Made by a program: the position numbers and the translations under genes. The notes beneath the pieces are model-generated. The model was given only the letters and a program-made list of their open reading frames with translations, ran no database searches and was not told the DNA's origin. A stretch of 64,000 nucleotides of DNA from Phaeosaccion multiseriatum (lineage: Eukaryota > Protista > Ochrophyta, other classes): assembly GCA_965112735.1 (NCBI GenBank), contig OZ218962.1, positions 1,116,001 to 1,180,000 of the forward strand, in the 5' to 3' direction. Positions 12,179 to 62,895 of this stretch are shown here, one piece after another (positions within the stretch are counted from its first letter, which is position 1; every line of letters starts with the position of its first letter).

Positions 12179-13101
12179 TCAGGCGCCCAGCTTGAAGATT
12201 CGCTCCATCGGGACCCACTTAACTCCTTCCTCGGCCCAGGGTAGGCGCTGCTGGAAGGTGTCCATGAGGGCCTCCCACTCCTGGACCTGTGTCAGTCAAT
12301 AAAGGCGTGTGTGTGTGGGAGGGGAGGAGGAGGGGGGGGCTGAGTAGAAGCTCGAGCTCGGGCGACGCATCGACTCAGAGGGGGAGGAGGAGAAGGAGGA
12401 GGAGGAGGAGGAGGAGGAGGAGGAGGAGGAGGAGGAGGAGGAGGGCTGCTCTTATCGGGAATGGTATTGGCTTGACTTGATTGGGATGGGCAAGGCTCTT
12501 GGTCGCGTCGTTCGTCCCCTGCTTTTTTGTCGCCTTTTCCTTCCTTACCTTGGGGTTGGAGGCGTCTGAGGAGGCCTTGGCAGAGCCGTCAAATTCGTCC
12601 TGTTGCACAACACAGTAACGATAAAGAGCAAAGAGGGGTTAGAAAGCTACCTCAGACTCTGTGTCCTAGTGCCGTCTCTAGGTACCCGTGCTCGATAGAG
12701 CCAAACCTTTTACTCCTCCCGACGTCCCTCTGTTTCCATGTCCGCGGTCGCAGCGAGCAGCACGTACCGTAGTTTCCATTATCATCATCAGGCGATTAGC
12801 CACTGAGTGCGTGGAGAAGCAGAGACAAGAGGCAGAGAAGGGCAAAAAAGAAAAGGTCGGCTTTAGTGACGTGCTCTTCCCCTTCTTCTATCCATCCCTC
12901 CCCTCCTTTCTCGCCCCTGCTGCAACAGCAACCGGGCTTATTTCTGGACTCACCAAGAAAGATCTCCATATCCAGAATCCCGGCACTCCGGATGGAGTCC
13001 GTGATCTCGGGCCACACATTACCAGCAGCGTGGTGCTCCTTGTACTTCTCGATCAAAGAAGGGTCGTCCTTCAAGTCGCAGGCCATGCAAAAGCGCTTCA
13101 T
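12179..13101 (-). CDS. rhaM: L-rhamnose mutarotase (RhaM family), 4 exons, 113 aa
   Basis: Exons 13101-12954, 12802-12768, 12599-12549 and 12286-12179 splice in frame with GT-AG to give MKRFCMACDLKDDPSLIEKYKEHHAAGNVWPEITDSIRSAGILDMEIFLVANRLMMIMETTDEFDGSAKASSDASNPKVQEWEALMDTFQQRLPWAEEGVKWVPMERIFKLGA. The Y..H...VWPE and QEWE.LM motifs are typical of the family. Confidence 0.88.
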
Positions 13102-13288
13102 CACGTTTCCTGGGGGAGATAGAGGAAAGGATGCTACTCACAAGACCCAGATAAGACCCAGGATGGAGCCGAACGAAATCGAATCCGGCCCTGACTCACA
13201 ACTGGGCTCACAACGGCCTTCTCCTCACACCCTTCTTCTTCCTTCTTTCTCTCTCTACCCCATAAGATGGGCCCCCATTAAGAGAATA

Positions 13289-30992: not shown

Positions 30993-34835
<3,843 letters not shown>

Positions 34836-38051: not shown

Positions 38052-38560
38052 TCGCCCCGACTCACTCCATGGCACTAGATGGCACTCCATGGCACTAGAT
38101 GGCATTCCGTGGCACACACTCCATGACACACTCCATTGCACTCCATGGCACACACTCCATGCCACTAGATGGCACTCCATGGCACACATTCCATGGCACT
38201 CGATGGCACTCCCTGGCACACACTCCATGCCACTAGATGGCACTCCATGGCACACATTCCATGGCACTCCATGGCACACACTCCATGGCACTAGATGGCA
38301 CTCCATGGCACACATTCCATGGTACTCCATGGCACACACTCCATGGCACTCGATGGCACTCCATAGCACACACTCCATGCCACTAGATGGCACTCCATGG
38401 CACACACTCCATGGCACTCCATGGCACACACTCCATGCCACTAGATGGCACTCCATGGCACACACTCCATGCCACTCGATGGCACTCTGTGGCACACACT
38501 CCATGGCACTCTATGGCACTCCGTGGCACACACTCCATGGCATTCCATGGCACTCCATGT
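38052..38560. repeat. Complex satellite built from CTCCATGGCAC / ACA / TAGATGGCAC subunits, between convergent genes
   Basis: About 500 bp with dozens of copies of the palindromic core CCATGG and a higher-order periodicity. Confidence 0.9.
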
Positions 38561-38754
38561 ACACTCTCTATTCTATTCGTTCAATCTGCAAGCGGCGTTG
38601 TCCATCAGTATCTGTACAAGTCTTCCGAGACAATTTCCCCCTCTTGGCCTCACGGGGGATGGGGGGGTAAAAGCTCTCTGGAGACTCTACACCTGTACAC
38701 CCGTACACCTCTAGACTAGGGGCACACCCTGGACCTGTAACGCCTCTAAAGCCT

Positions 38755-41294: not shown

Positions 41295-41732
41295 CTTTCT
41301 TAGAGAAAACTACGGAATGTGAAGAGCGAGAATCCCAGCCCAGGCTGAGTCACGGTTGGGAAGTTGGTGATACAGCGTCACAGGCTGGCAAAAAACGCCT
41401 CCTACCGACTCGGGGGGCACGCGAAAAACATACATGCATATTGTATATATACATAGGTGTGAAGTGAAGGTGAAGGGAGAATTCGAGAATTCACACGAAG
41501 CGGCACGATGAGAGCACCGGTTTCCCGACATGCTGATGCCACTCCCTGACTCCCCCCTGCTCTCTCCAAGAATACCTTGGTTGCCATCTCCTCCTCCTCC
41601 CCCACACACACCTCCCGCGCCCTCCCCCCTCCCCGCTCCTGCTCCTCACTCCGTTGCCTCTCGAGTGAGTCGATACCACCAACTCTCCCAGCACCGACAC
41701 CTACCATCGTCTCTTATATATATATATATATT

Positions 41733-42647
41733 TCACAGGGGGCACAAAGGAGTCTTTAAAGGTCTTTAAAGGTTCTGGGCCTGAACCTTTGTGCATGAAC
41801 AAAGGGTTTAAAGGTTTTAGATGAAAAGCCGAAAACGTTAGTAAACGGTTTAAAGGTTTTGGGGCCTGAACCTTTGTGCATGAACAAAGGGTTTAAAGGT
41901 GTTTGGGGAAAAGCCGAAATCGTTAGTAAAGGGTTTAAAGGTTTTGGGCCTGAACCTTTGTGCATGAACAAAGGGTTTAAAGGTTTTAGAGGAAAAGCCG
42001 AAAACGTTAGGAAAGGGTTTAAAGGAATGGGCCACATTCCTTTAAAGGTGACTGCATCTTTGACAGCCTCAGGGACGGAGTCGCTAAAAGTTAAATTCCG
42101 TATAGTTGGTGGTGCGGCTGGGGCTGCTGCTGCTGCTGCTGCTGGTGCTACTGCGGGTGCCGGTGCTGGTGCTACTGCTGCTGCTGGTGCTGGTGCCGCT
42201 GCTGCTCCTCCGTCAGCTTCCATCCCGTTGTGAACCAAGCACCCTTTACCCTTTGTGCAGGATGTGTGTATGTGGTAGGATGTGTGGATTTGTGGATGTG
42301 AGGATGTGTGGAGGAGACAAGGCGTATAAACTCTAATGGGCAAAGGAAAAGGGTTTAAAGGTTTTAGGGAAAAAGCCGAAAACGTTAGTAAAGGGTTTAA
42401 AGGTTTTGGGCCTGAACCTTTGTGCATGAACAAAGGGTTTAAAGGTTTTAGAGGAAAAGCCGAAATCGTTAGTAAAGGGTTTAAAGGTTCTGGGCCTGAA
42501 ACCTTTGTGCATGAACAAAGGGTTTAAAGGTTTTAGAGGAAAAGCCGAAATCGTTAGTAAAGGGTTTAAAGGTGCCCGAGAGCACTCCTTTGTCAAAGGA
42601 ATTAGCACAAATCCTTTGTAAAACCTTTACCTTTGTACCCCCTGTGA
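41733..42647. mobile_element. 915-bp non-autonomous TIR DNA transposon with internal tandem arrays
   Basis: 18-bp TIR TCACAGGGGG(C/T)ACAAAGG with 1 mismatch; flanking 6-bp direct repeat TATATT (41727-41732 and 42648-42653); AT-rich relative to host. Confidence 0.85.
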
Positions 42648-44077
42648 TATATTTCCTCAAGCAATCCCCATCCGCCCCCCCCCCCCTCCCCCCGTGGGCA
42701 CACACACATACGTAATTCTTTGGTTGATACCTTTAAGTCCTACTTATCCTCCCGTGTCCGCCCCACTCCCTACTCCCTCTTGTCACTGCATTATACTCTC
42801 CCTCTTGTGCACTTACTTTATTCTATTTCCCCCCCTCCCCCCCGCTCTCTTCTCCTTCATAACACAAAACTCCTTTGCCTATGCTCACAGCACTTACCAT
42901 CGCCCTGATTTTTGACACGCAACAGATCACCGAGCCTTCAGTGACAAAAGAGGAAGCAAAACTCTTTCCAAGTTCCCGCAGCGGTTTCCGTGCGCAAATG
43001 AAGCGCTGATTGGCAACGATGCTACTGCAGGCGACAGGCTCTAGCCCGTGCTCCCAGTGCCGAAAATAAGCCGTGAGGACCGAAGAAGCAGGGGCATCGA
43101 GCGCAGTAAAAAGGCGAGCGTGACAGAGGGCATCCGAGTGGTACAAGCCCCACCCCCACCCCCCTTCCGCGCAAACAAACCACTAACCTGATGTCGAGGT
43201 GTACAGAACGTTCCGCCAAATCATTCACACTGATTCCTATGATGGAACCCTCTTCCTCCTCGTCCTCCTCCTCCTCCTGCTCCTGCTCTTGCTCCTCGTC
43301 CTCGTCGTCCTCCTGCTCCTCGGTGTCCCTCCTCCAACTGCAGTTGCTGCTGCTGCTCCTGCTGCGCCTTCTGCCGGGGCCAGAAGGACGGCGGAGCGAC
43401 CCACCCAAACACGGTCCAATACAGGGCAAGCGTTTTGGTGTGCCTCGCTCCCGCGGAGGCCGCCTGGGCACTATGAGGTCGTGGTCGAGCAGCGTCCCGC
43501 TCGCGCCCGTCAGGGCAGCACACATCTCCATATACTCCAGTGTATACAGCAAACGACCGCCAAGCGAGAGGTGAGCAGCAACCCCAACCGCATTTTCAGT
43601 AGGAAGACCCTCAGCGGCTCCACCAAAGGATCGAGCAGGAAAGCGTCGACGCTCTGTTCCTCGCTCTTCTCCCTCCTAGCCCACTGCTGACTGAGGCTCT
43701 GATGAGCGTGAAATCGAGGCCCCGCGCCTCCGTGAGAGAGAGGCCCACGCAGAGGACTCGGTCCTTGCTCTCCCCCCGAAATCGCTGCGCAAAAGCGCCC
43801 GTCACCGCAGCATCAACGAGGGCAGGCACACCGAAAGTGAGTGCTCGAATGCTCCGATTGCCTGTGATCCTTCGACGCCCTCCACGTGTTGTAAACACCT
43901 ACGACCCCCGGGGGGATTCTCACCAAGAGTCCATGCAGAGAAGGAGGAGAAAAAGAGTGGTCTCGCAGCGTCTGCTGTAAGGGCACGCTGCTGCCGGTGA
44001 GGCTTTCTGGGTTGTAAAGGTCGTCGGGGAAGATCCAATTGTGGCAAAAAGGGGGGAGTGGAAGGTGGAATTACGGA

Positions 44078-47000
44078 ATGGCGATGGCAAAGGCGGCAGC
44101 GAAGAGCAAGAAACGAAGCAGGGATTATAGAGAGCTGGGGGGGGCACTCCACTGTGTCACGATGGACGAGAGCGGAATTCCGGGGCACGCACTTATGCCA
44201 GTCGACAATTCTGGGGAGCCCCGGTCTCTTTTTCCGTCACGCAATGCTGGAGGAGGGAGTAGTAGAAGTGGTGCTGATCAGCAGCAGCATGTGGAGGATG
44301 GCGGGGCAGAGGAAGAGGAAGCGGAGGAGGACGACGAAGGTGAAGGGGAGGATGAGGAAGACGAGGATGAGCGAGCGGGAGGAGCAGCAGGGGGCGCAGG
44401 GGGGAAGGGGGTGAGACACGTGACTCCACCGCCGCCGCCAGCGCTGTCCGCAATCCCCAACGCACTTGCAGCTGCAGCCGCAGTGGAGGGGATGGCTACA
44501 ACTACAGATGCTGGGTCAGCGGCGTCAGCGGCGTCAGCGGGCGCATCGGGGAGTGCTGTGGTGGCGGCCCACATCGCAGCAACAGTCGCCAGAGCGAAAG
44601 CGCGTCGGAAGGCCAGCGACAGCGTCATCAGGGACTATGACCCGTGTGGGGCGAGCGTCAAGAGCAAGCTAGGCTTTGTGATGGAACCTGGGGGCGCTGG
44701 GAGAGCGGGGGGCAGTAGTAGCGGCAGTGCCATTGGAGGAGCAAGCAGCAGCGGAGGGGGGAAGCGACGAGCATGTGGAGGACTAATTGAAGACGGAGGA
44801 GGAGAAGGAGGAGGAGGAGGAGGAGGAGGAGGAGAAGGAGGAGGAAGTAGTGGAGGAGGAGGAGGAGGAGGAGGAGGAGGAGGAGGAAGTAGTGGAGGAG
44901 GAGGAGGAAGTAGTGGAGGAGGAGGAGGAGGAGGAGGAGGAGGAGGAGGAGGAGGAGGAGGGGGAGGGGGGGGAGGAGAGGAGGGAGGGGGAGGGGGAGG
45001 GAGTGGAGGAGGGGGGGGAGGAGAGGAAGCGGGAGGAGGGGGAGAAGCAGGAGGGGGAGGAGGAGGGGGGGGGGCGGGAGGAGGAGGAGGAGGAGGAGGA
45101 GGAGGAGGCCCGGCAGATGCGGCTGGGGGAAGCTCCGGCTGCAGCAGCAGCACGAGCAGCAGCAAGTCTCTGGCAGCTCCGTGGACCGTACAGGAGTTCT
45201 TCGCCCATCCTCGCCAGTATGATCCGTCTGCGAGCATCCTGCACCATCCCGTCAACTCGGAGGGAGACACCGCGCTCTATCTGGCGGCCAAGCAGGGCAT
45301 TATGGATGCGGTGGAGGTGCTGCTTGCCGTGCCTTGTACGCAGATCAATTGGCAGAACCATAAGGGAGTCACTGCCCTGAGCATCGCTGCGCACAAAGGA
45401 CGGGCCAATGTTGTGGGAGTGCTTATTGACGCGAATGCCGATGTCAATATTGAGAGCAACAATGGCTCGACGCCTCTGATTCAGGCCTCGCACTTTGGCC
45501 ATGCGGAGGTGGTGAAGCGGTTGGTCAAGGCAGGGGCATCTGTGGATAAGCCCAATAACAAGGGCACCACGGCTCTCATGAGAGCAACGCAGGTACGCCA
45601 GTTGTGAGTGAGATTAGATTAGAGCTTGCCAACTTTTGTATTGATGGGAGGAGGGCTCGACTATCCATCTATCTACGCCTGGCTTGGCATTTGGCGTTGC
45701 TATGCTCGTCCTTCAGCTGATAGTTGAGAGAGAGAGAGAGTAATGCGTGGTTTGGCTTGGCGCAGCACAGGACCCCACGCACCACACAATCGCCCACTCA
45801 CGCACGCACGCACTCCGCTTTCCCCTCTACGCTACCCTTCCCTCCACCCATCATGCACACCCTCTTCCAACACACTTCCCTTCTCCCTCCTCTTCCTTCC
45901 CACAGGAGGGGAATGGCACAGTCGTGAGGATACTCATCGGCCATGGGGCGAATGTGACGCGGCGCAACAACGAGTTGATGAATGCCCTCATGCTGGGCTC
46001 TCAGCGGGGGCACGGGGGTATCGTGCGAGAGCTAATCCAGCACAGCGCCGAGGTAGACGGGCAGACGGCTCAGGGGAGCACAGCGCTCATGCTGGCGTGC
46101 AAGAGGGGTCACACAGGTGGGTATAGATGCATTAGAAGGAGGGGTGGGCTTGGTTTTCCGCGGTTGTAGGTTTCAGGCTAGTGGACCTGCTGTTCCCTCA
46201 CTCTTTGTTTATTTTTGTGTGTTGTCCCTTTGCTTCTTGCTTTGCTTGGCCTTTTGCCTCTCGAACAGAGGTGGTGGAGGTGCTGCTGGCGGCGGGAGCC
46301 GAAATGAACATGAAGGATTCGAGGGGGCGTACTGCGAGAGACACGGCAAGCAGGAGGCACCACCCCAAGATACTCGCCCTGCTCCACCCGGGCAAGCAGA
46401 TGCGCCTGATGCAGGACGACGTACGCCAGCATAGAACCAACTTGCTCAACTGGCTCTACCAGCCCATGCAGCGCCCGAGGTGAGATGGGGATTATGGATC
46501 AGAGGCCATACGACCTGACGGTTCGATGCATTCGAATGTGCGGTGGGGAGGGAGGGAGGGAGGGAGGGACGGAGGGTGGGAAGAGAGAGTGAGAGAGATG
46601 GTTCTCTCTGCCTTTCTCTCTCTTCTCTCCTTCTCCCTCTCTCTGTGTGTGTTCTCTCCGTCCCTCTCGTTCTCTCTCTCTCACACACACGCCCCTCTCT
46701 CTCTTGTCTCTCTCTCCCTCTCTGCAGCGTGGACGGTATGTTCATGAGTCAGGGCTATTCCACCAGCGCTCTGGCCAAGGCGTTCCAACTTCCCCAGCCC
46801 CTGTTCGAGAGGGTGATTCTCTTCATGCCCCTGCCCAGGCTGTGGGAGAAGACGCTGTGCAAGTTGCGCAGGTGAGAGAGGGAGGGAAAGAAAGAAAGGG
46901 ACAGAGGGAGAGACACATATGTGTATATGTATATATATATATGTGTGTTTGTGTGTGAGCGTGTGTGTGCGCACGCAGTTGCGTGCATGCGTGCGCGTGT

Positions 47001-47899
47001 GCAAGCAATGTGTATAGAGCGACATTGTCGGCATTGCTCTGATCCTCTGACCCTCGCTCGGCCTTGCTCCTCCATTGCCCCCCCTCAAATGCAGGTGCTG
47101 TCACATTGAGCCAAACGAGGCCATACGAGGCGGCAACCAAGTGATGGACGAGATTTTCACTGACATGGTGCTAACCAAAGAGCAGGACCAGGGGGGATTT
47201 CTGGTACGAATCGCACAAGATGCGGCCTTGGCAAACCGTCTTGTAACGGATTTTGGCATGCCGGAGTGCCTACTGAAGGGGGTGAAGGAGTGGAGTGACA
47301 TTCAAAGCATCATGCGGCGCTTGGATAAAGGGGTAACTTTCAACACGCAAGTGGCAATTGAAGTGGTGCATTTGGCCATGTGTTTGCATCAGTGGTACCT
47401 GGTGAGAGAGGGTGGAGCGCATCCAATCGTTCATCCCACCTCGGAGGCCATGCTCTCTGGAGGCTTTCATGCCATATACACGCCGGTGTCTGCAGGAGGT
47501 GTCATGGGTGGAGCAGGAGCAGGAGGAGGAGCAGCAGCAGCAGCAGCAGCCACAGGAGGAGCAGCAGCAGGAGGAGGAGGAGGTGGTGGAGCGGCAGCAG
47601 CAGCAGCAGGGGGGGGAGGAGGGGGGGCAGGAGGTGGAGGAGGAGGGGGAGGAGGAGGAGGGGGAGGGGGGGCGCATGGGGCGGGGTTTGTTGGGGGTGG
47701 GGTGGGCCTCGATGTGTTTGATTTCGGAGCCGCTCATGACGATTTCGTAGTCGGAGGAGCAGGAGGAGCAGCAATAGCAGCAGCAGCAGCAGGAGGAGGA
47801 GGAGGAGGAGGAGGAGGAGGCATTGCGGGCGGGGGAGCGGACGTGGACATGGTTGCAGGAGGAGACAGCGACTCATCGGACGAGGAGATGGACCTCTGA
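44078..47899 (+). CDS. Ankyrin-repeat protein, 5 exons
   Basis: Seven ANK-like repeats (GDTALYLAA, GVTALSIAA, GSTPLIQAS, GTTALMRAT, LMNALMLGS, GSTALMLAC, GRTARDTA). C-terminal LPQPLFERVILFMP is F-box/SOCS-like. Gly-rich termini. Confidence 0.9.
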
Positions 47900-48570
47900 T
47901 TGATAAGAAATATGGAATCAATCATTCGAGGCTCGATGGGATCGGACCGGACGAGCGAACGAACGGATGAACGGATGAAAGTGCTGACGTCGTGAGTGAC
48001 ACCAAAACCGGTATCCAGGGTGGGATGGTGCGGGGGTGGGGGTGGGTGGGTGGGTGGGTGGGTGGGTGGATGGGTGGGGGAATGCGGGCCGCCAGACGAT
48101 GGGACAAGGGAGACAGGCTTACTTACAGGGGGGGTATGATTGGGGTGTGGGGGAAGCAGAGCAACGTTGAAGAGGGAAAATTTGCGTTTGCAGGCTTTGT
48201 GGTCACCTGAAGGTGGAAGTGCTCATGTTTATGTATAATTTTATTTTCGACCCATTGTATTTATGGGCAGGATAGGCAGCAGCAGCAAAGCCTGAGATGT
48301 TTCATACCCCGTGGTTTGATGGGAATACATACATTGAAAGCAAACGTCGGTCTTTGGACGACGAGAGGAAACACATCTGGTTAATTATATCTAAGTCTGT
48401 GGTAATTTCAAAGCCTCTTGGCTCTCTTTCTCCCTCTTTCCTCTTCTCTCTCTCTCCCTCTCTCTCTCGTCTCTTCCTTCGCAGCTCCACCAGCTGCAGC
48501 GAAATGCATTGTGTGCTAGTATACCAACCAAGGACTTAGTCCATGCATTGCATACTACGAAGTTAAGTAC

Positions 48571-49838
48571 CTAGTCCGAGTCGAAGTCTGCATCCGAGTC
48601 CACTTCTCCCCCCCCCCCATCCTCCTCCACCACCTCCCCCCTGGCCAGCATGTTCCGCCATTTGTCCTTGAGATCTCCTGCCGAGCGCCTCGGCCCGAAC
48701 GCGTACTCTCGACGGATGACGGCCCACTTGCACCCCCCATGCTCACGCACCCCCCGACACAAGTTGCCTACCTCCCGAGTAGACCAGGCCACACGCTGCC
48801 GTCTCGCCGGAGCCCGCACCGCCGCTTTATCACCCACTTTTCCTGCTGATGCTCGTGCGGGTGCTGCTGCTGCTGCTGCTGCTGGCGCTGGTGTTCCTGC
48901 TGCTCCGGCAGCTGCTGCTGGTGCTCGTGCTGCTGCGGCTGCTCCTGCTGCTGCTGGAGCTCCTCCCCTGCTGCTCTGCTTCTCATCGCCGTCGCTCTCC
49001 TCAGAGGATGGTTCGCCGGATGATGCCGAAGAGACAGCGGGTGAGGGTGAAGGAGAAGAATGCCTTGCCTCTCGCTTCATTTCTCGCTTCTGCCGTCGTT
49101 AGTCATTCGAGTGAGGGTGTATGCGGCGTTGAGGGGGGGGGAGATAAGTTTGGGTTCAGCTGGTCGAGAGGAGGGTGAAGACAGGGGCGAATAGAAGCAC
49201 AGGCAGGGTCCCTGGTCAGTGTGTCAGTCAGTCAGTCAGTCAGTCAGTCATGCCAAATACCACTCGCCACAGTCTTGCTTACCATGCCCTTTCACTGACT
49301 TCATCTCCTCACCTTTCTCCCTTTCCCCTTGGATTCAGAAGCGCCTCTGTCCTTCTCTTCCCCCTTCTCAACGGCTTTCCACCCCATCTGCTGCGCCTCC
49401 TGTCTGCTGCTCCTCCCCTTGCTCTTGCTCTTGCTCTTGCTCTTGCTCTTCTTCTCCTTCTTCTTCTTCATCGTCTTCTTCTTCTCGCTCCGCTCCGCCT
49501 CTCTGGTATAACCTCTCGTGGTGCTCTCTCCCGTGTCTGCTGTACGAGAACCCTTCCCATGGGATGGTCGCCTCCTGCTGCGGCTGCTGCTTCTGCTGCT
49601 GCTGATGCTGCTGGTGATGGTGCTGTTTCCCCCTCCCCCTCCCCCTCCCTTTGCAACCCTCCTCCCCACCTTCGACACGGAGCGTGGCTGAGGGCGACGG
49701 AAGCTACCCTTCCGGCCTCCTCTCGCATCGAAGCTACCCTTCCGGCCTCCTCTCGCATCGAAGCTACCCTTTCGGCCTCCTCTCGCATCGTCGCGCTCCT
49801 TCCCCCTTCGCCCCCTCCGCTGCCGCTCCCTTTCGTCG

Positions 49839-49895
<57 letters not shown>

Positions 49896-52720
49896 CCTTC
49901 ACTCCAAGAGCGGTGGCCCCTCTTCGTCCACCACCCCCGCTCCCTCCTGTAAGCTTGAGCCTCCTCCTCGCTCGTCGAATCCTCCGCTTCCTCCTCCTCA
50001 CTAGGACTCCTCCTCCTCCTCCTCTTGTAGCTGCTGCGGCTGCTGTGGTGGCTGTGGCGGCGGCTGTGGTGCCTGGCCTTCTCTGGGGTTTCCATCCTCC
50101 TCTTCCCCCCTCCGCCATTTGCATAGCCCCTTCGCCCATGCTGCCGACCCTCACCCTCAGCAAGGCCCAAACCCAAGCGTCTCGAGGAGGGGTGCCGCTC
50201 CCCTCTGGTACCCCTCCTACGACCACCTCCACGACCACCTGCTGTATGACCAACTGCTCTATGACCACCTCCGCCATCGGAGGAGTCGGCCTCCTCGGAT
50301 TCGGACGCTTGTCCATCCGCCTCCTCCTCCTCCTCCTCCTCCTCATATCTGCCCCACCGCTCTTCTCCTCTCCACCCCTTGCTTGCTGCAGGGGGGCGAC
50401 CGGTCCTCCTCCTGTCCTCCTGCTCCTCCTCCTCCTCCTCCTCCTCCTCCTCCTCCTCCTCCTCCCTCATCTTTGCCTTCCTCTTCTTCTTGTCCTTCTT
50501 ACTCGAGCGTGCTGCCTCACGGTGGTCATCGCTTCTTCTTCCGCTCTCTCTTCTGCCGACCGAGGATTGCCTCCTCTGCGATCCACCACCCTTGTCCATC
50601 ACGCCTCCCCAGCCCATCATTCTGCGCCTCAAAGAAACTTTGCTGTCGTCATCATCTCTACTGACATAACGGTAAGGATCTTCCTCTTCCTCTTCCTCCT
50701 CCTCCTCCTCCTCCTCCCCCTCCTCCTCCTCCTCCTCCTCCTCCTGCTCCTCCTCCTCCTCCCCCTGCCCCTCCTCCTCACTTTCCACCGCCTCCTGGTA
50801 TCTGCGGTTGGCCTTTGTCGAAGATGAGGCAGGGGCGGCGCTTCTCGCTTCTCTTGTGCCCCGCTTGCCTGTGCTGTTGCCTGTACTACCACGCCGTGCC
50901 CGCTCCCTTCTTGTGAGTCTTCCCCTAGGACCCTCGTCCTCCTCCTCCTCGTCCTCCCCCTCCTCCTCCTCCTCCTCCTCCTCCTCCTCCTCCTCCTCCT
51001 CCTCCTGCTCCTGCCCCTCCTCCTCACTTTCTACCGCCTCCTGGTATCTGCGGTTGGCCTTTGTCGAAGATGAGGCAGGGGCGGCGCTTCTCGCTTCTCT
51101 TGTGCCCCGCTTGCCTGTGCTGTTGCCTGTACTACCACGCCGTACCCGCTCCCTTCTTGTGGGTCTTCCCCTAGGACCCTCGTCCTCCTCCTCCTCCTCC
51201 TCCCCCTGCCCCTCCTCCTCACTTTCCACCGCCTCCTGGTATCTGCGGTTGGCCTTTGTCGAAGATGAGGCAGGGGCGGCGCTTCTCGCTTCTCTTGTGC
51301 CCCGCTTGCCTGTGTTGTTGCCTGTACTACCACGCCGTGCCCGCTCCCTTCTTGTGAGTCTTCCCCTAGGACCCTCGTCCTCCTCCTCCTCGTCCTCGTC
51401 CTCCTCGTCCTCCTCCTCCTCCTCGTCCTCCTCCTCCTCCTCCTCCTCCTCCTCCTCCTCCTCCTCCTCCTCCTCCTCCTCCTCGTGGTTGCCTCGTCCC
51501 CTTGTGCTCCTCCTACCAGTCCTCTCCCTTCCCCGTCCCGATGATGATCGACCCTCGCGGCCTCGCTTTGTGCGTCGCTTTCCCCCCTGCTCAGCCCTGC
51601 GGCTGCTCTCCTCCTTGCCTCTATCTTCTCCTTCCTCCACTGAGCTCTCCCCGCTCTCATCCTCCTCGCCGCCACCGATTAGCTTCGCTCCATCACCATT
51701 AAGCTCCTCCTCCTCCTCCTCCTCCGCCACCGCCGCAGCCACTTTGTTCATCGAGTGCCTAAACTTTCGTGTCTCCTTTGTCTCCTTTTTCGCGCTCTCA
51801 TCCTCCTCCTCGTCCTCCTTCTCTTCCCCCCCGTCGTCGAACTCTCCCTCCTTCTCTTCCCTCCCGTCGTCGAACTCTCCCTCCTTCTCCTCCTCCTCGT
51901 CCTCTTCCTCCTGCTCTTCCTCCTCCTTCTTCTTCCCTGGTTTGTATCGCCCTCTTGTGCCTCTTCTGCTGTTCCTCCCTTTGTGGATGTGGTGCCTCAG
52001 CTTTCGTGTCTCCTTTGTCTCCTTTTTTGCCCTCTCGTCCTCCTCCTCGTCCTCCTTCTCTTCCCCCCCGTCGTCGAACTCTCCCTCCTTCTCCTTCTCC
52101 TCCTCATCCTCTTCCTCCTGCTCTTCCTCCTCCTTCTTCTTCCCTGGTTTGTATCGCCCTCTTGTGCCTCTTCTGCTGTTCCTCCCTTTGACCCCTCCCG
52201 ACGATGATCGGTCCTTGTCGCAGCCCCCACGGCCTCGCTTTCTGCCTCGCCTTCTCCCCTGCTCCTGGTTACTATCGCTTTCCCTGCCCCCGTTCACTCG
52301 CTTTCTTTGAGATGGGGTGCTGCGTGTGCCGCGCGTCCAAGCCTCCACTATATCTATTTCACTATCATCAGTTCGGTAGTCGTCATCACTGTCATTCCTC
52401 ATCCTCTTCTCTTGCTGCTTCGGCTTCCTCTTCTTCGTGGGCCTTTCCTCCCCCTCCTCTTCCTCGTCCTCCTCCTCCTCCTCGTCGTCGTCGTCGTCGT
52501 CGTCGTCATCGTCCTCTTCCACCACCATCTTCCCCCTTCCCCCCTCCTCCTCCTTCTCCTCCTCCTCCTCCTCCTCCTTTCCCTCCTCCCTCTGCTCCTC
52601 GTTTCTCCTCGGGCGCTTCACGGCCCAGACGCTAGAAGGGGACGGAGGAACGGCGGCAACCCCTCGCCGTCCCCGCCTCCTCCTCCTCGTTTCTTGGACC
52701 TCTGTGCTCCCAAACCTCAT
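48571..52720 (-). CDS. Telobox (TRF-like) single Myb-domain protein with a very long acidic/basic disordered N-terminus, 2 exons
   Basis: C-terminal RVAWSTREVGNLCRGVREHGGCKWAVIRREYAFGPRRSAGDLKDKWRNM contains the telobox signature DLKDKWRN. The 1139-aa ORF splices in phase 0 (AAG|GTGAGG ... TGACTAAC...GGCAG|AAG). Confidence 0.8.
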
Positions 52721-52870
52721 AGTGTTGCTTTTGTTTTTTAGGAGGGGGAGGGGGGAGGGGGGAGCTGGACCCTCTTACGTAACCTTTCTGTAATTTCCTT
52801 GGCACGTTGGAATCCGGCGAACTTTCTGAACTTTCTCCTTCCTTTCTGGCGCTCTATTGTAGCTACAGGG

Positions 52871-53367
52871 TCGGCCCCGTGCACGCCTAGCGGCCTAGGC
52901 CTATTTTGAAAAATTGCCCGGCCTAGCGAGGGCCGTAGGCTCTCGGCCTATTTATAGGCCGCCTAGGCGGCGGCCTAGGCGGGGCAGACGCCAACTAGGC
53001 GCAGGTCCAGGGCGGGAATATGCTCATATGCCCCTGCCTGGGCTGGCCCGGAACCCGCCCAAGTGTCGTCAGTTTTAAGCAAATGTATTGCATGGGATAA
53101 GTGAGGAGTAGCTAGACTTGGTTCGTGTTGTCTCTTTCCGCCTCGCTGGCCCTACGAGGAGTGCAGGCCTACAGGTGTGCTGCTACCCACTAGCTGGGCG
53201 GCACCACGCACGCGCCCACGGTCACTGGGAGGCTGCCTAGAGGCGGGCTAGAGGCTGCCTAGAGGCGGGCTATAGGCCGCCTAGGGCTGAAAAGTGAGCG
53301 GCCTAGAGCGGCCGGAGGCCGCCGGCCTAGGCCTAGAGCCTAGGCCGCTAGGCGTGCACGGGGCCGA
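52871..53367. mobile_element. 497-bp MITE
   Basis: Perfect 30-bp TIR TCGGCCCCGTGCACGCCTAGCGGCCTAGGC; 7-bp direct repeat TACAGGG on both flanks; many subterminal GGCCTAG motifs. Confidence 0.93.
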
Positions 53368-53508
53368 TACAGGGGGGAAAGGAGGGCATATAGGCCAACA
53401 ATATAACGTCTTATGTTAGGTGTGGCCCTCCCTTATCCCAATTATCCTTGTCCTGCGAGTAAGCCCAACCTATCCCCCCCCTACTAGACCCTACCCCCCA
53501 CCTTGTAA

Positions 53509-53662
53509 TCAACCCCTGATACACTATCCGCTATCCGCTATCGCTGGCGCCAGCCGGCACGTTATCCGCTATCGGCCGGCGCCAGCCGGTGCGCTATCCG
53601 CTATCGGCCGGCGGCCGATAGCGCGCTATCGAGAATGTGGGCGATAGTGTATCAGGGATTGA
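53509..53662. mobile_element. 154-bp MITE
   Basis: 20-bp TIR TCAA(C/T)CCCTGATACACTATC with 1 mismatch; 6-bp direct repeat TTGTAA (53503-53508 and 53663-53668); internal CTATCCGCTATC repeats. Confidence 0.88.
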
Positions 53663-53697
53663 TTGTAAGCATGCCCCAGCCAGTCCAGTGTCCAGTG

Positions 53698-54044
53698 TCG
53701 ACCCGATTCTCGGTAGAATGCTACCGGGCTGTAGCACGCCAGCAGCAGGTAGCAGCTAGCTCACGCCGGCGGTGGCAGCGGATGGGAGGGAGGGAGGGAG
53801 GGAGGGAGGGAGGGAGGGAGGGAGGGAGGGAGGGAGGGAGGGAGGGAGGGAGGGAGGGAGGGAGGGAGGGAGGGAATCGGTTCAAATTAAGGCGTCTTCG
53901 CGTATTGTCCCGTCGGCCGGTAGCAGGTCAAGGTCGGCTGACGCCGGCGGTAGCAGGTAGGACGTTGGTTGACGCCGGCGGTAGCAGGTAGGACGTTGGT
54001 TGACGCCGGCGGTAGCAGGTAGCAGGTAGCACGTCAGGGGTCGA
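53698..54044. mobile_element. 347-bp MITE-like element
   Basis: Termini TCGACCC...GGGGTCGA (7-bp perfect TIR, with TGCTACC/GGTAGCA inside both ends); 6-bp direct repeat CCAGTG (53692-53697 and 54045-54050); internal GACGCCGGCGGTAGCAGGT repeats. Confidence 0.72.
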
Positions 54045-54423
54045 CCAGTGTCAGGTGACCCGGGGGAGGGGTGAAGAGGTGTTACGGCCTAGAGGCCAGC
54101 CTAGAGGGAGAAATTGGCCGGCCTAGGGGCTAGAGCACAGGCCAATAGGCCAGTCTGGAGCCGACGTTGTGCATATCGGTGTTATTCCTTCACGTTAGTG
54201 CCCGTGATCAATGAAACTGTACGACGAATCATCTACAAGTCGAGTCGCCAAAGTGCGCTCTGTGTGTTGGTGGTGGACCGAGCCAACCTTGACCGATGGA
54301 ACAACGAAAGGGCTTTGGGGCATCGCAGTCCATCACGCCAGTCTTCCATCTTCCTTCTGTTAAGATGCTGTACAGAGACCGTGTTGTTCCTCTCCAAACA
54401 ATGCCGCTCTCTTTCTCTCTTTG

Positions 54424-55362: not shown

Positions 55363-55722
55363 GAGGAGGAGGAGGAGGAGGAGGAGGAGGAGGAGGAGGA
55401 GGAGGAGGAGGAGGAGGAGGAGGAGGAGGAGGAGGAGGAGGAGGAGGAGGAGGAGGAGGAGGAGGAGGAGGAGGAGGAGGAGGAGGAGGAGGAGGAGGAG
55501 GAGGAGGAGGAGGAGGAGGAGGAGGAGGAGGAGGAGGAGGAGGAGGAGGAGGAGGAGGAGGAGGAGGAGGAGGAGGAGGAGGAGGAGGAGGAGGAGGAGG
55601 AGGAGGAGGAGGAGGAGGAGGAGGAGGAGGAGGAGGAGGAGGAGGAGGAGGAGGAGGAGGAGGAGGAGGAGGAGGAGGAGGAGGAGGAGGAGGAGGAGGA
55701 GGAGGAGGAGGAGGAGGAGGAG
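55363..55722. repeat. (GGA)n pure trinucleotide tract, about 120 units
   Basis: About 360 bp uninterrupted. Confidence 0.97.
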
Positions 55723-55758
55723 GGAAAAGCGCTTTCTTTATTTCCGGGGCACTTGCAC

Positions 55759-60030: not shown

Positions 60031-62895
60031 CTACTTCTCCTCCTCCGAAACAGTGGGGATTTTGGTTTGTATGAACCAGTTCCCCTCTCCGGTTTGGTGC
60101 ATTCTGAGACAGGGGGGGGCGTTGGTGGGGCGAAGACGGGGGGGAAGTAACGGAGAGTAACGGACACGGGACGGGAGAAAGGAGCGGAAGGCACCGTATG
60201 AAGAAAGGAGGGGGAGGACATAACACCATCACTTATCACTATCGCCCCCCCGGGGGTGAAAGCAACACCAACATGGAGGTCAAAGCGAGCATGTGTGGGG
60301 CCTCACGAGTGAGTGAGTGAGTGAGTGAGAAGACTCTTGTTCCTCACTCACCTCATGTCATCATCTAGGTACTTTACTGTGAACTGCGCTCCGCCATCCA
60401 CATCCGTGCCCTGCTCCTTGTTGATCTCCTTCTGCTTCCTCCTAGCCAGCCAGCTGATGAGCCTGTGTGATGGAGCGAGAAAGAGAGAAAGAAAGAGGGA
60501 GGCATAGAGAGCGAGAGCAAGAGCAAGAGAGAGAGAGAGAGAGCGAGGGAGAGAGAGAGAGCAAGAGAGAGAAGAGCGCGCGAGAGAGAAAGAAACATGT
60601 AGTGTGCGTGTGAGACAGATGGGGAGAAAGAAAGGTGTAGTGTGCGTGTGAGACAAACACCACAGGGCAAGAGACGCGGAGAGAATATGGGGCCAGCGAA
60701 TCGGCCTGTATCTCTCCTTCACTTACAGGGTCGGCAGCGGGACGACAAAGCTCCTGGGAAGGAGGGGGTTACTGGAGCGGCGCACCACCCTCACACGACA
60801 AAATTTCAGTTCCATCCGTTGGTCATCCAAAGCTTTGCCCTTTGTGACCACCTTGAGCAAGTCCAGCTTCGGGTACAGCACAATAGACGGAGATATATAA
60901 AGGGAGAGAGAGAGAGAGAAAGATGGAGAAAGAGATGGAGAGAGATAGAGAGAGAGGGGGGGGGAGAGAAAGAGAGAGGCAGAGAGAGAGATGCAGGCCG
61001 ATTAAGGGCATGCCACACAGCGAGAAGAGGAGAGCAGTAGGAGAACTATACCCTAACTCTATACCCGATCCCCTGTACCCGGGTGTAGAGTACAGAAGGC
61101 CTGCACGTCACATGCGTCTCATCAGTCACGCCAGCGCTCTCTCTCTCCCTCTCTCGGGAGTTGCCCACCTTCCCTGATGCCCAAGCAGTCGATAACGTGC
61201 TAACACCCCAAACAGCCCCTCCCCCCCCCCCTCTCTCTCTCTCTCTCTGCCGTTCTCCGACTGTTCACTCACCTTTCCTTCAAGCTGTCTGAAGTCGATA
61301 ACATTCACGAGAGTGCCCTTATCAGGCCGAACCTCCTGGCTTGTGACGATGCTCCCCTTCTTGGGCTCCTCCCCCTTCTTCCTGCCCTTGTTGGGGCTGC
61401 GTGTGGGGTGATGGGTTGGTTGGTTGATTGGTTGATTGACTTGTTGGTTGATTGACTTGTCGGTTGATTGACTTGTTGGTTGATTGATTGGTTGGTTTGC
61501 GGATTGGTTGGTCAGTGATGATTGATGGGTTGGATGGTTGGTTGATGATTGATTGATTTGAGTGATCGCTTGAGTGACGGTTTGATTGATTGATTGATTG
61601 CGCAGAGCGAAGGCAGGGAGTCGGCAGGGTTGTCCTCAGTGAAGGCGTGGAGAAGTAGAGAAGGCCCGCGACCCACCTACAACCCATCTTCTCCGACTTA
61701 GTCAAGACTTACTTAAAGGTCGCGTCCTTCCCGGTCGTAAAGCGCAACTTCCAGTCTCCGTAAAGCTTGCATTCCTGTGGAGGAGCGAAGAGAGGGGCCG
61801 GTTGGCCAGGCAAGCGCGCAGACAGGCAGGCAAGCAGGCAGGCAGACAGGCAGGCAGGCAGGCAAACAGACAGGCAGGCAGACAGGCAAGTAGACAGGCA
61901 GGCAGGCAGACAGGCAGGCAGACAGGCAGGCAGGCAGACAGGCAGGCAGACAGGCAGGCAGGCAGACAGGCAGGTAGGCAGACAGGCAGGCAGACAGGCA
62001 GGCAGACAGGCAGGCAGACAGGCAGGTAGGCAGGTAGGCAGGCAGGCAGGCAGACAGGCAGGTAGACAGACGGGCAGGCAGACAGGCACGGAGAAGGTTA
62101 GAGGTTCTCGGAATCTCAGGGCTTGGTGACGGACATTCGTACTCGGAAAGAGGCAAAAAGGTCCATACACACATACTCAGCACAGGAAAACAACCCCTTC
62201 GTACCTCTGGCTTGACGCCTTTATATCCCTTCCAGCCCAACATGGGCTGCGGGGTGGGGTTAAGCTTGATCAGCTCGTGCGCGATTTCGATGGTCCGATT
62301 GCCTGCTCCCGAAAGAGTGATGCTGTGTGGTGGATGAGGAGAAGAAAGTGAGCATCCCTTTGACCAGTTTCAAATAGAAGATATTGAACCGCTCATGTTT
62401 ACAGCAAAGACATACAGAAACTCACCTCTGTGCGGAGACACTCTCCGCACTCACGAGCCCGTCAAGCCTCTCCCCTATGCTCTTCTTTGCCTTCTTCTTC
62501 CCCTCATCTTCCTTTTCCTTGCCTTTCTCCTTTCCCTTGCCCTCTTCTTCCGCTGCATCCTCTTCATCTTGCAGCTCTCTCTCTAGTTTCCACAAACGCG
62601 CTTGCTGGGCCTTCCACTCATCACACGCCGCCAATAGCTCCTTCTTAAGCCTCTCGCGCTCCTCTCCCTTTTTTGTATCTTCTTCCACTACACTAGCGGC
62701 GCCCGTCGAGGAGGCTGCCGGGGCGGAGGCAGCAGAAGCAAGGGTGTATCCTCTTCCTCTCACAGGACGAGCAGCAGCGCGTGGCAAGGGGGTTGTGCTG
62801 AACGAGGATACGGAGGGGAACATAAGGCAGAGAGCAAAGAGGAGGCATCCTCTCCTTCTCTTCTGCCCTGGCGGCGCTACTCTTTCTCGCCACAT
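60031..62895 (-). CDS. Plastid lipid-associated protein / fibrillin (PAP_fibrillin) family, multi-exon
   Basis: Leader CLLFALCLMFPSVSS-F (bipartite signal). Motifs LKKELLAAC, ELIKLNPTPQP, LYGDWKLRFTT, TLVNVIDF and FTVKYLDDDMR-MHQTGEGNWFIQTK; stop TAG at 60033-60031. Confidence 0.8.
61818..62090. repeat. (CAGG/CAGA)n microsatellite, intronic
   Basis: About 270 bp compound tetramer repeat. Confidence 0.9.

What the first reader, a model, noticed from the sequence alone, without database searches (positions are those of the whole stretch)
41727..54050. Four internally unrelated TIR elements share TC...GA termini, 6-7 bp TSDs and private subterminal motif arrays: a candidate undescribed DNA-transposon group
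Seen: elements at 41733-42647 (TSD TATATT), 52871-53367 (TACAGGG), 53509-53662 (TTGTAA) and 53698-54044 (CCAGTG). All start TC and end GA, and three start TCRRCCC. Each repeats its own short motif inside and next to the TIR (AAAGG/CCTTT, GCCTAG, CTATC, GGTAGC). Established: short TIRs plus subterminal motif arrays are hAT-like, but canonical hAT elements have 8-bp TSDs and usually CAG/TAG termini. TSDs of 6-7 bp are rare among cut-and-paste elements (some atypical hAT subgroups, IS3EU, Dada). Inference: several families of one transposase lineage, each with a diverged binding motif but conserved end chemistry, recently active given the intact TIRs and TSDs.
Basis: partly seen in the sequence, partly recalled or inferred. 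Interest (0 to 1): 0.85.

Follow-up and report, generated by a model that had tools for sequence, protein, structure and literature searches.

The report
Mini-transposon cluster with switched binding motifs
Four small non-coding jumping-DNA copies in an alga are real insertions, but three of them are relatives sharing an unusual end signature (TC...GA, 6-7-base target duplication) and differing by a one-letter change in a repeated docking motif, while the fourth is probably a separate, more ordinary element; the enzyme that moves them is not in this window and could not be tested.

Summary
All four elements, their TIRs and flanking direct repeats are at the stated coordinates and exceed chance. 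(1) They are not all unrelated. E3 and E4 are homologous in opposite orientation (z=12), with every motif switched CTATC to CTACC (9/0 vs 0/11). E2's terminus modestly matches theirs (top 1.7%). (2) E4's left TIR is only 7 bp, about 18 nt being deleted. (3) E1 shows no kinship and reads equally well as CACAG ends with an 8-bp TSD. A fifth, decayed E2-like remnant adjoins E4. Best reading: E2-E4 are MITEs of one TCRRCCCC-ended, 6/7-bp-TSD cut-and-paste lineage with diverged transposase-binding motifs, piled in a promoter hotspot. The scan already noted this family many times in this genome, with an 8.4-kb P-like propeller transposon as likely partner; I could not test that link. The end/TSD signature matches no family in the papers I could read; nearest are P/Galileo, Ectocarpus P-like (CAAGG, 7 bp), hAT6/7 and IS3EU.

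The parts
41733..42647 (.). E1, 915-bp non-autonomous TIR element (41734-42646 if the TSD is 8 bp); TIR 17/18; unrelated to E2-E4
41726..41733 (+). E1 left TSD: ATATATTT (8-bp reading) or TATATT at 41727-41732 (6-bp reading), at the end of an (AT)n tract
42647..42654 (+). E1 right TSD: ATATATTT (8-bp reading) or TATATT at 42648-42653
41757..42025 (+). E1 left array, 42-bp period with two alternating spacers; one spacer carries the inner TIR motif GCACAAAGG inverted
42026..42340 (-). E1 core: GC-rich Ala/Pro-coding-like fragment with no homologue found
42348..42573 (+). E1 right array, same 42-bp units in the same (direct) orientation, about 94% identical to the left array
52864..52870 (+). E2 left TSD TACAGGG (7 bp)
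52871..53367 (.). E2, 497-bp MITE; 30-bp perfect TIR starting TCGGCCCCGTG; CCTAG motif counted 20 times over both strands; first CTA at position 17
53368..53374 (+). E2 right TSD TACAGGG
53503..53508 (+). E3 left TSD TTGTAA (6 bp)
53509..53662 (+). E3, 154-bp MITE; TIR 19/20 starting TCAACCCCTGA; CTATC x9, 7-bp period at the left end, inverted motif pair near the right end
53663..53668 (+). E3 right TSD TTGTAA
53692..53697 (+). E4 left TSD CCAGTG, last unit of a short CCAGT(G) run at 53680-53697
53698..54044 (-). E4, 347-bp sister of E3 in opposite orientation; intact end TCGACCCCTGAC at 54044; other end keeps only 7 bp of TIR (about 18-nt deletion); CTACC x11; internal (GGGA)n tract; 31-bp tandem units near the intact end
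54045..54050 (+). E4 right TSD CCAGTG
54087..54166 (+). Remnant X: decayed E2-like left subterminal region with no terminus, partner end or TSD
   Evidence: score 45 vs background 16 +/- 3
49301..52720 (-). Host ORF (1139 aa, low complexity) starting 151 bp from E2; probably spliced to the Myb/telobox-type exon near 48574-49080 (splicing inferred, not tested)
   Evidence: (PF00249, E 1e-5)

Best explanation
E2, E3, E4 and remnant X are non-autonomous cut-and-paste elements (MITEs) of one lineage with ends TCRRCCCC(G)TG-N5-CTA and 6- or 7-bp TSDs, moved in trans by a DDE transposase encoded elsewhere. SHOWN: TIRs, TSDs, E3/E4 homology, the motif switch, the X-E2 likeness and clustering within 1.3 kb beside a gene start. 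INFERRED: the outer ~10 bp are the cleavage/joining site, conserved across families. The CTA-core motif that starts at TIR position 16-17 and repeats every 7 bp (E3, E4) or roughly 8 bp (E2) is the transposase-binding site. Its family-wide versions CTATC, CTACC and CCTAG reflect transposase variants with different specificity. The two ends are unequal: a head-to-tail array at one, an inverted motif pair at the other. The TSD is the filled stagger of strand transfer. The cluster is an open-chromatin promoter hotspot. FROM UNCHECKED NOTES ONLY: the partner is the genome's 8.4-kb TCGA/TCG-ended, 6-7-bp-TSD P-related transposon with an NHL propeller and PHD finger. E1 is a separate family, more likely CACAG-ended with an 8-bp TSD (P- or hAT-type).
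For: TIR/TSD anatomy and nulls. E3 vs reverse E4 score 73 against null 22.8 +/- 4.1; both E3 ends have E4 counterparts. Motif counts 9/0 vs 0/11, Fisher p 6e-6, though copies are not independent. E2 terminus 162nd of 9715 TC sites under a profile trained only on E3/E4. For E2-E4 the reading shifted one base inward fails at 5 of 6 outer positions (flanks), so TC...GA is real for them. P elements favour promoters and have unequal ends with internal binding sites (PMC7776569). P-superfamily TSDs vary 7-9 bp (PMC3698922). A P-like clade with 7-bp TSD exists in Ectocarpus (PMC12477816 suppl. 3), and the host is an ochrophyte. Earlier notes independently describe TCG-ended 6-7-bp-TSD autonomous elements here (unchecked).
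Against: No transposase seen or tested (only ORFs near the elements were scanned). One copy per family, so boundaries and copy number are not confirmed by other copies. E2 has no internal homology to E3/E4 beyond the terminus (z 0.3-2.9), and its terminal match is only p about 0.02. The motif switch could come from intra-element homogenisation instead of transposase specificity. Known P ends start CA, not TC (Ectocarpus CAAGG; the CANRG consensus is from my memory). E1's TSD length is undecidable from this copy.
Confidence: 0.6

Rival explanations
1. All four elements, E1 included, belong to one TC...GA, 6-7-bp-TSD lineage.
For: E1 can be read TC...GA with TATATT; it has the same general build, a short TIR whose inner motif recurs in subterminal arrays.
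Against: E1's terminus is G-rich and scores below median against the E3/E4 profile (ranks 7620 and 9008 of 9715); no CTA-core motif; no sequence homology (its best score against E4 does not exceed the shuffle maximum); an exact 8-bp TSD reading exists.
Confidence: 0.15
2. E2-E4 are one lineage, but their partner is a described non-P family with short TSDs (hAT6/hAT7-like or IS3EU-like).
For: hAT families with 5-, 6- and 7-bp TSDs and IS3EU with 6-bp TSDs are described (PMC12730594); short TIR plus subterminal motif arrays is the hAT pattern (own knowledge); an Ectocarpus hAT has atypical TTGGC ends.
Against: IS3EU ends are TAYGG..CCRTA, not TCRRCCCC; Ectocarpus hATs make 8-bp TSDs; earlier notes tie TCGA ends with 6-7-bp TSDs to a P-like enzyme (unchecked).
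Confidence: 0.12
3. Mixed bag: E3/E4 are one family pair, E2/X another and E1 a third, and the shared TC start of E2 is coincidence; they share only a hotspot.
For: E2 differs in TSD length (7), motif (CCTAG) and TIR register (+1), and has no internal homology; p about 0.02 is modest.
Against: TCGGCCCC vs TCGACCCC is 7/8; CTA core lies at the same place after a 1-nt shift; top-1.7% rank; unchecked notes report TCGGCCC/TCGRCCCC families with interchangeable heptamers elsewhere in the genome.
Confidence: 0.12
4. Chance inverted and direct repeats in a microsatellite-rich genome.
For: The window is extremely repeat-rich; E1's TSD lies in an (AT)n tract and E4's in a CCAGT run.
Against: 30/30 TIR with an abutting 7-bp repeat; nulls; E3/E4 homology; motif enrichment far above background.
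Confidence: 0.01

Closest known systems
P superfamily (Drosophila P, 1360/Hoppel, Galileo) and the P-derived MITE BuT5
   Same: Cut-and-paste TIR elements with internal transposase-binding sites, unequal ends, promoter preference, TSD length varying within the superfamily (P 8 bp, Galileo and 1360 7 bp, BuT5 8-9 bp), MITE derivatives (PMC7776569, PMC3698922). E1 in its CACAG/8-bp reading fits the recalled CANRG end consensus.
   Different: E2-E4 end in TC...GA and E3/E4 make 6-bp TSDs, shorter than the 7-9 bp reported in those papers; many iterated motif copies rather than one or two binding sites per end; transposase not examined.
Ectocarpus P-1/P-2/P-3_Ec32 (PMC12477816 suppl. [quoted passage not shown]
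   Same: Same host supergroup (ochrophyte), P-like, 7-bp TSD, TIRs of 36-39 bp (E2: 30 bp, 7-bp TSD).
   Different: Termini CAAGG...CCTTG, not TCRRCCCC; that curated list has no TC...GA TIR family and no 6-bp-TSD DNA family.
hAT6 and hAT7 subgroups of hAT
   Same: 6-bp and 7-bp TSDs respectively (PMC12730594); short TIR plus subterminal repeated binding motifs.
   Different: Defined by a hAT transposase, not tested; described from an animal hAT lineage (hAT6) and rust fungi (hAT7); terminal similarity not shown.
IS3EU
   Same: 6-bp TSD with TIRs (PMC12730594).
   Different: IS3EU ends are TAYGG..CCRTA; here TCRRCCCC.
Dada
   Same: 6-7-bp TSD (own knowledge); present in Ectocarpus.
   Different: Dada lacks TIRs and targets small-RNA genes (own knowledge); these have TIRs, and the window has no tRNA or Rfam RNA.

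Membership tests
MITE / non-autonomous TIR transposon | Short, TIR-bounded, flanked by TSD | tested here: met
   (E1-E3 clear; E4 with one damaged TIR), null
MITE / non-autonomous TIR transposon | No transposase coding capacity | tested here: met
   154-915 bp; six-frame translations and searches empty
MITE / non-autonomous TIR transposon | High copy number with homogeneous size | not testable with these tools
P superfamily | P-type DDE transposase in the autonomous partner | not testable with these tools
   No partner in the window; earlier notes claim a distant P-like enzyme but give no sequence
P superfamily | 7-8-bp TSD | tested here: inconclusive
   E2 7 bp (met); E3 and E4 6 bp (not met); E1 6 or 8 bp
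P superfamily | CA...TG (CANRG) termini; consensus recalled, CAAGG in Ectocarpus | tested here: not met
   E2-E4 begin TC and the shifted reading fails; only E1's alternative reading CACAG fits
hAT (canonical) | 8-bp TSD | tested here: not met
   E2-E4 have 7, 6 and 6 bp; E1 ambiguous
hAT6 / hAT7 | 6- or 7-bp TSD | tested here: met
   definition PMC12730594
hAT6 / hAT7 | hAT transposase in the partner | not testable with these tools
   No partner available
IS3EU | 6-bp TSD | tested here: met
   E3, E4
IS3EU | TAYGG..CCRTA termini | tested here: not met
Dada | No TIRs; insertion into small-RNA genes | tested here: not met
   TIRs present; no tRNA or Rfam hit
EnSpm/CACTA (for E1, CACAG ends as in Ectocarpus) | 2-3-bp TSD at the CAC terminus | tested here: not met
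   At the CACAG boundary no 2-5-bp repeat, only the 8-bp one

The most novel reading that the evidence does not exclude
E2-E4 are the miniature fleet of an undescribed P-related transposon lineage with TC...GA ends, 6/7-bp TSDs and a propeller-containing transposase. In it, subfamilies keep the cleavage site but switch the iterated binding motif (CTATC, CTACC, CCTAG) in step with their transposase, giving naturally orthogonal transposase-end pairs within one genome.
Probability: 0.45. Interest if true: 0.65.

Novelty: new variant of a known kind. Interest (0 to 1): 0.4.

Why it matters
MITEs themselves are ordinary. Two things give value. First, the TC...GA end with a 6-7-bp TSD is a classification signature I could not match to any family in the papers available, in a poorly surveyed algal group where curators already flagged a P-like 'likely new clade'. 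Second, sister families with a one-letter, element-wide change of the putative binding motif offer a direct test of how transposase specificity and element ends co-diverge. The main novelty would lie in the autonomous element, which this finding does not contain.

Tried and rejected
Exact and degenerate TIR patterns in viral contigs, metagenome contigs and prokaryotic genomes gave nothing, or chance hits in bacterial/phage-like DNA with no partner TIR or motif array. Pfam on 18 ORFs, including those around the elements, found no transposase; the whole window was not scanned exhaustively. E1's inner coding-like piece had no homologue among 1.84 billion representatives. A rhamnose-mutarotase exon did not identify the host; an ankyrin exon placed it among ochrophytes only. 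No tRNA or Rfam RNA. Paper searches for P element plus NHL, P plus Ulp1/PHD, and 6-bp TSD superfamilies found nothing relevant; Kojima's review, Yuan and Wessler 2011 and Feschotte and Pritham 2007 were not held. Left out: the Ectocarpus P-like protein fragments seen in a supplement have no reference id, so they were not searched or aligned; spliced host gene models were not joined. Rejected: an 8/9-bp TSD with C...G ends for E2-E4 (outer bases mismatch); EnSpm for E1; a larger host element enclosing the cluster (no TIR in the reconstructed empty site).

Full report
Host and setting. The window is gene-dense eukaryotic DNA of about 58% GC, very rich in microsatellites. An ankyrin exon at 44018-45604 matches proteins of brown algae and Chrysoparadoxa at about 70% identity, so the host is an ochrophyte; the species was not identified.

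The observation. E1 (41733-42647) has a 17/18 TIR, E2 (52871-53367) a 30/30 TIR with TSD TACAGGG, E3 (53509-53662) a 19/20 TIR with TTGTAA, and E4 (53698-54044) a CCAGTG TSD but only 7 matching terminal bases. An unbiased TIR-plus-TSD scan recovered E2 and E3 as its two top-scoring pairs; it missed E1 and E4, probably through its complexity and length filters. Two random positions carry an abutting complex 6-12-nt direct repeat at 0.0006-0.0014, and shuffled windows hold 0-1 inverted repeats of 18 nt. These are real insertions.

Where the ends lie. A TC...GA element with a 6-bp TSD X can also be read as a C...G element with an 8-bp TSD A-X-T. For E2, E3 and E4 that shifted reading fails at five of six outer positions, so their TC...GA ends stand. 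For E1 it succeeds exactly: CACAG...CTGTG flanked by ATATATTT. Both readings predict the same empty site, so only other copies can decide. CACAG fits the P-type CANRG end as I recall it, and Ectocarpus has P-like CAAGG and hAT CACAC ends. EnSpm is excluded because no 2-3-bp TSD flanks that boundary.

They are not four unrelated elements. E3 aligns with the reverse complement of E4 over about 110 nt (69% identity; score 73 against a shuffled mean of 22.8, z=12). The other ends correspond too: E4's left end matches E3's right end from position 19 onward, so E4 has lost about 18 nt from inside its left TIR, plausibly between CCC microhomologies. At every aligned motif, E3 has CTATC and E4 has CTACC, in both orientations and at both ends (9/0 vs 0/11, Fisher p 6e-6; copies partly arose by tandem duplication, so this overstates independence). 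E2 has no internal homology, but its terminus is the same design with one extra base: TCGGCCCCGTG, five bases, then CTAG. A profile trained only on E3/E4 ends ranks E2's terminus 162nd of 9715 TC-starting sites (1.7%), while E1's ends rank 7620th and 9008th. The 'private' motifs of E2-E4 are thus variants of one CTA-core motif, and E1 stands apart. A fifth piece, X (about 54087-54166), is a decayed relative of E2's left subterminal region (score 45 vs 16 +/- 3).

E1 anatomy. Two direct arrays of 42-bp units with alternating spacers flank a GC-rich core. One spacer contains the inner TIR motif in inverted form, a likely binding site. The core's Ala/Pro-rich frame has no homologue. It sits at the end of an (AT)n tract between genes.

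Mechanism. Shown: boundaries, TSDs, homology, motif switch, and four insertions within 1.3 kb starting 151 bp from the start of an ORF that probably belongs to a Myb/telobox-domain gene. Inferred: a DDE transposase supplied in trans binds the iterated CTA motif, pairs two unequal ends, cuts at the conserved TCRRCCCC termini and integrates with a 6- or 7-bp stagger. Family-wide motif differences most likely track transposase variants; homogenisation inside each element is the alternative. Promoter clustering and unequal ends parallel the P element (PMC7776569). The short CCAGT(G) run left of E4 may be footprints of earlier insertion and excision, which is speculation.

The partner. None was found near the elements or in public DNA collections (hits were chance). 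Earlier notes from this scan describe, many times, TCG...CGA 6-bp-TSD MITE families with interchangeable motifs in this genome, a GGTAG/GATAG switch, a TCGRCCCCWGAC terminus (which E4's intact end matches), and an 8.4-kb TCGA-ended element with a distant P-like transposase containing an NHL propeller and PHD finger. These are unchecked AI notes without sequences. I verified the motif switch and the terminus on my own copies, but not the link to that transposase.

Comparison with known families. P makes 8-bp, Galileo and 1360 7-bp TSDs (PMC3698922). hAT5, hAT6 and hAT7 make 5-, 6- and 7-bp TSDs, and IS3EU makes 6 bp with TAYGG ends (PMC12730594). The curated Ectocarpus list has three P-like families with CAAGG ends and 7-bp TSDs, called a likely new clade, and no TC...GA TIR family or 6-bp-TSD DNA family (PMC12477816 suppl. 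3). E2-E4 work like MITEs of a P/hAT-type cut-and-paste system but fail the terminus test for P and IS3EU and the TSD test for canonical hAT; membership by transposase is untested. Repbase itself could not be consulted.

Verdict. Real elements; interpretation partly right. Three of four, plus a remnant, probably form one lineage with an end/TSD signature I could not match to a described family; E1 probably does not belong. New variant of a known kind, interest 0.4. The stronger novelty depends on the autonomous element, which lies outside this window.

Noticed in passing
   Followed up: yes
window 53676-53697: Short run of CCAG/CCAGT/CCAGTG units left of E4, including TSD-T-TSD; possibly excision footprints. 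The 18 nt at 53680-53697 equal the length missing from E4's left TIR, perhaps coincidence.
   Followed up: partly
window 60699-61003: 18-nt near-perfect inverted repeat starting AATCGGCC flanking an apparent small exon; no TSD.
   Followed up: partly
window 41757-42573: E1's two 42-bp arrays are direct, not inverted, and contain AGGGTTTA, 8 bases of the TTTAGGG telomere repeat; a Myb/telobox-type gene lies about 6 kb away. Probably coincidence.
   Followed up: partly
window 53368-53382: E2's TSD plus flank (TACAGGGGGGAAAGG) loosely resembles E1's TIR; no partner end found, treated as chance.
   Followed up: partly
window 12799-13137 (-): Intron-containing L-rhamnose mutarotase gene whose listed hits, where named, are bacterial (Bacteroidota at the top, 74-78% identity); possible horizontal acquisition, eukaryotic orthologues not examined.
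   Followed up: no
window 49301-52720 (-) and 48574-49080 (-): 1139-aa low-complexity ORF with internal duplicated blocks, followed by a Myb/telobox-type exon (PF00249); candidate telomere-binding-type protein with four transposon insertions in its upstream region.
   Followed up: partly
window 55365-55725 and 32686-32928: Very long pure (GAG)n and (AAG)n tracts; the second lies in a PP2A catalytic-subunit intron.
   Followed up: no
window 38060-38566: Intergenic minisatellite built from CACTCCATGG-type units between the aldo-keto reductase-like and FAD monooxygenase-like genes.
   Followed up: no
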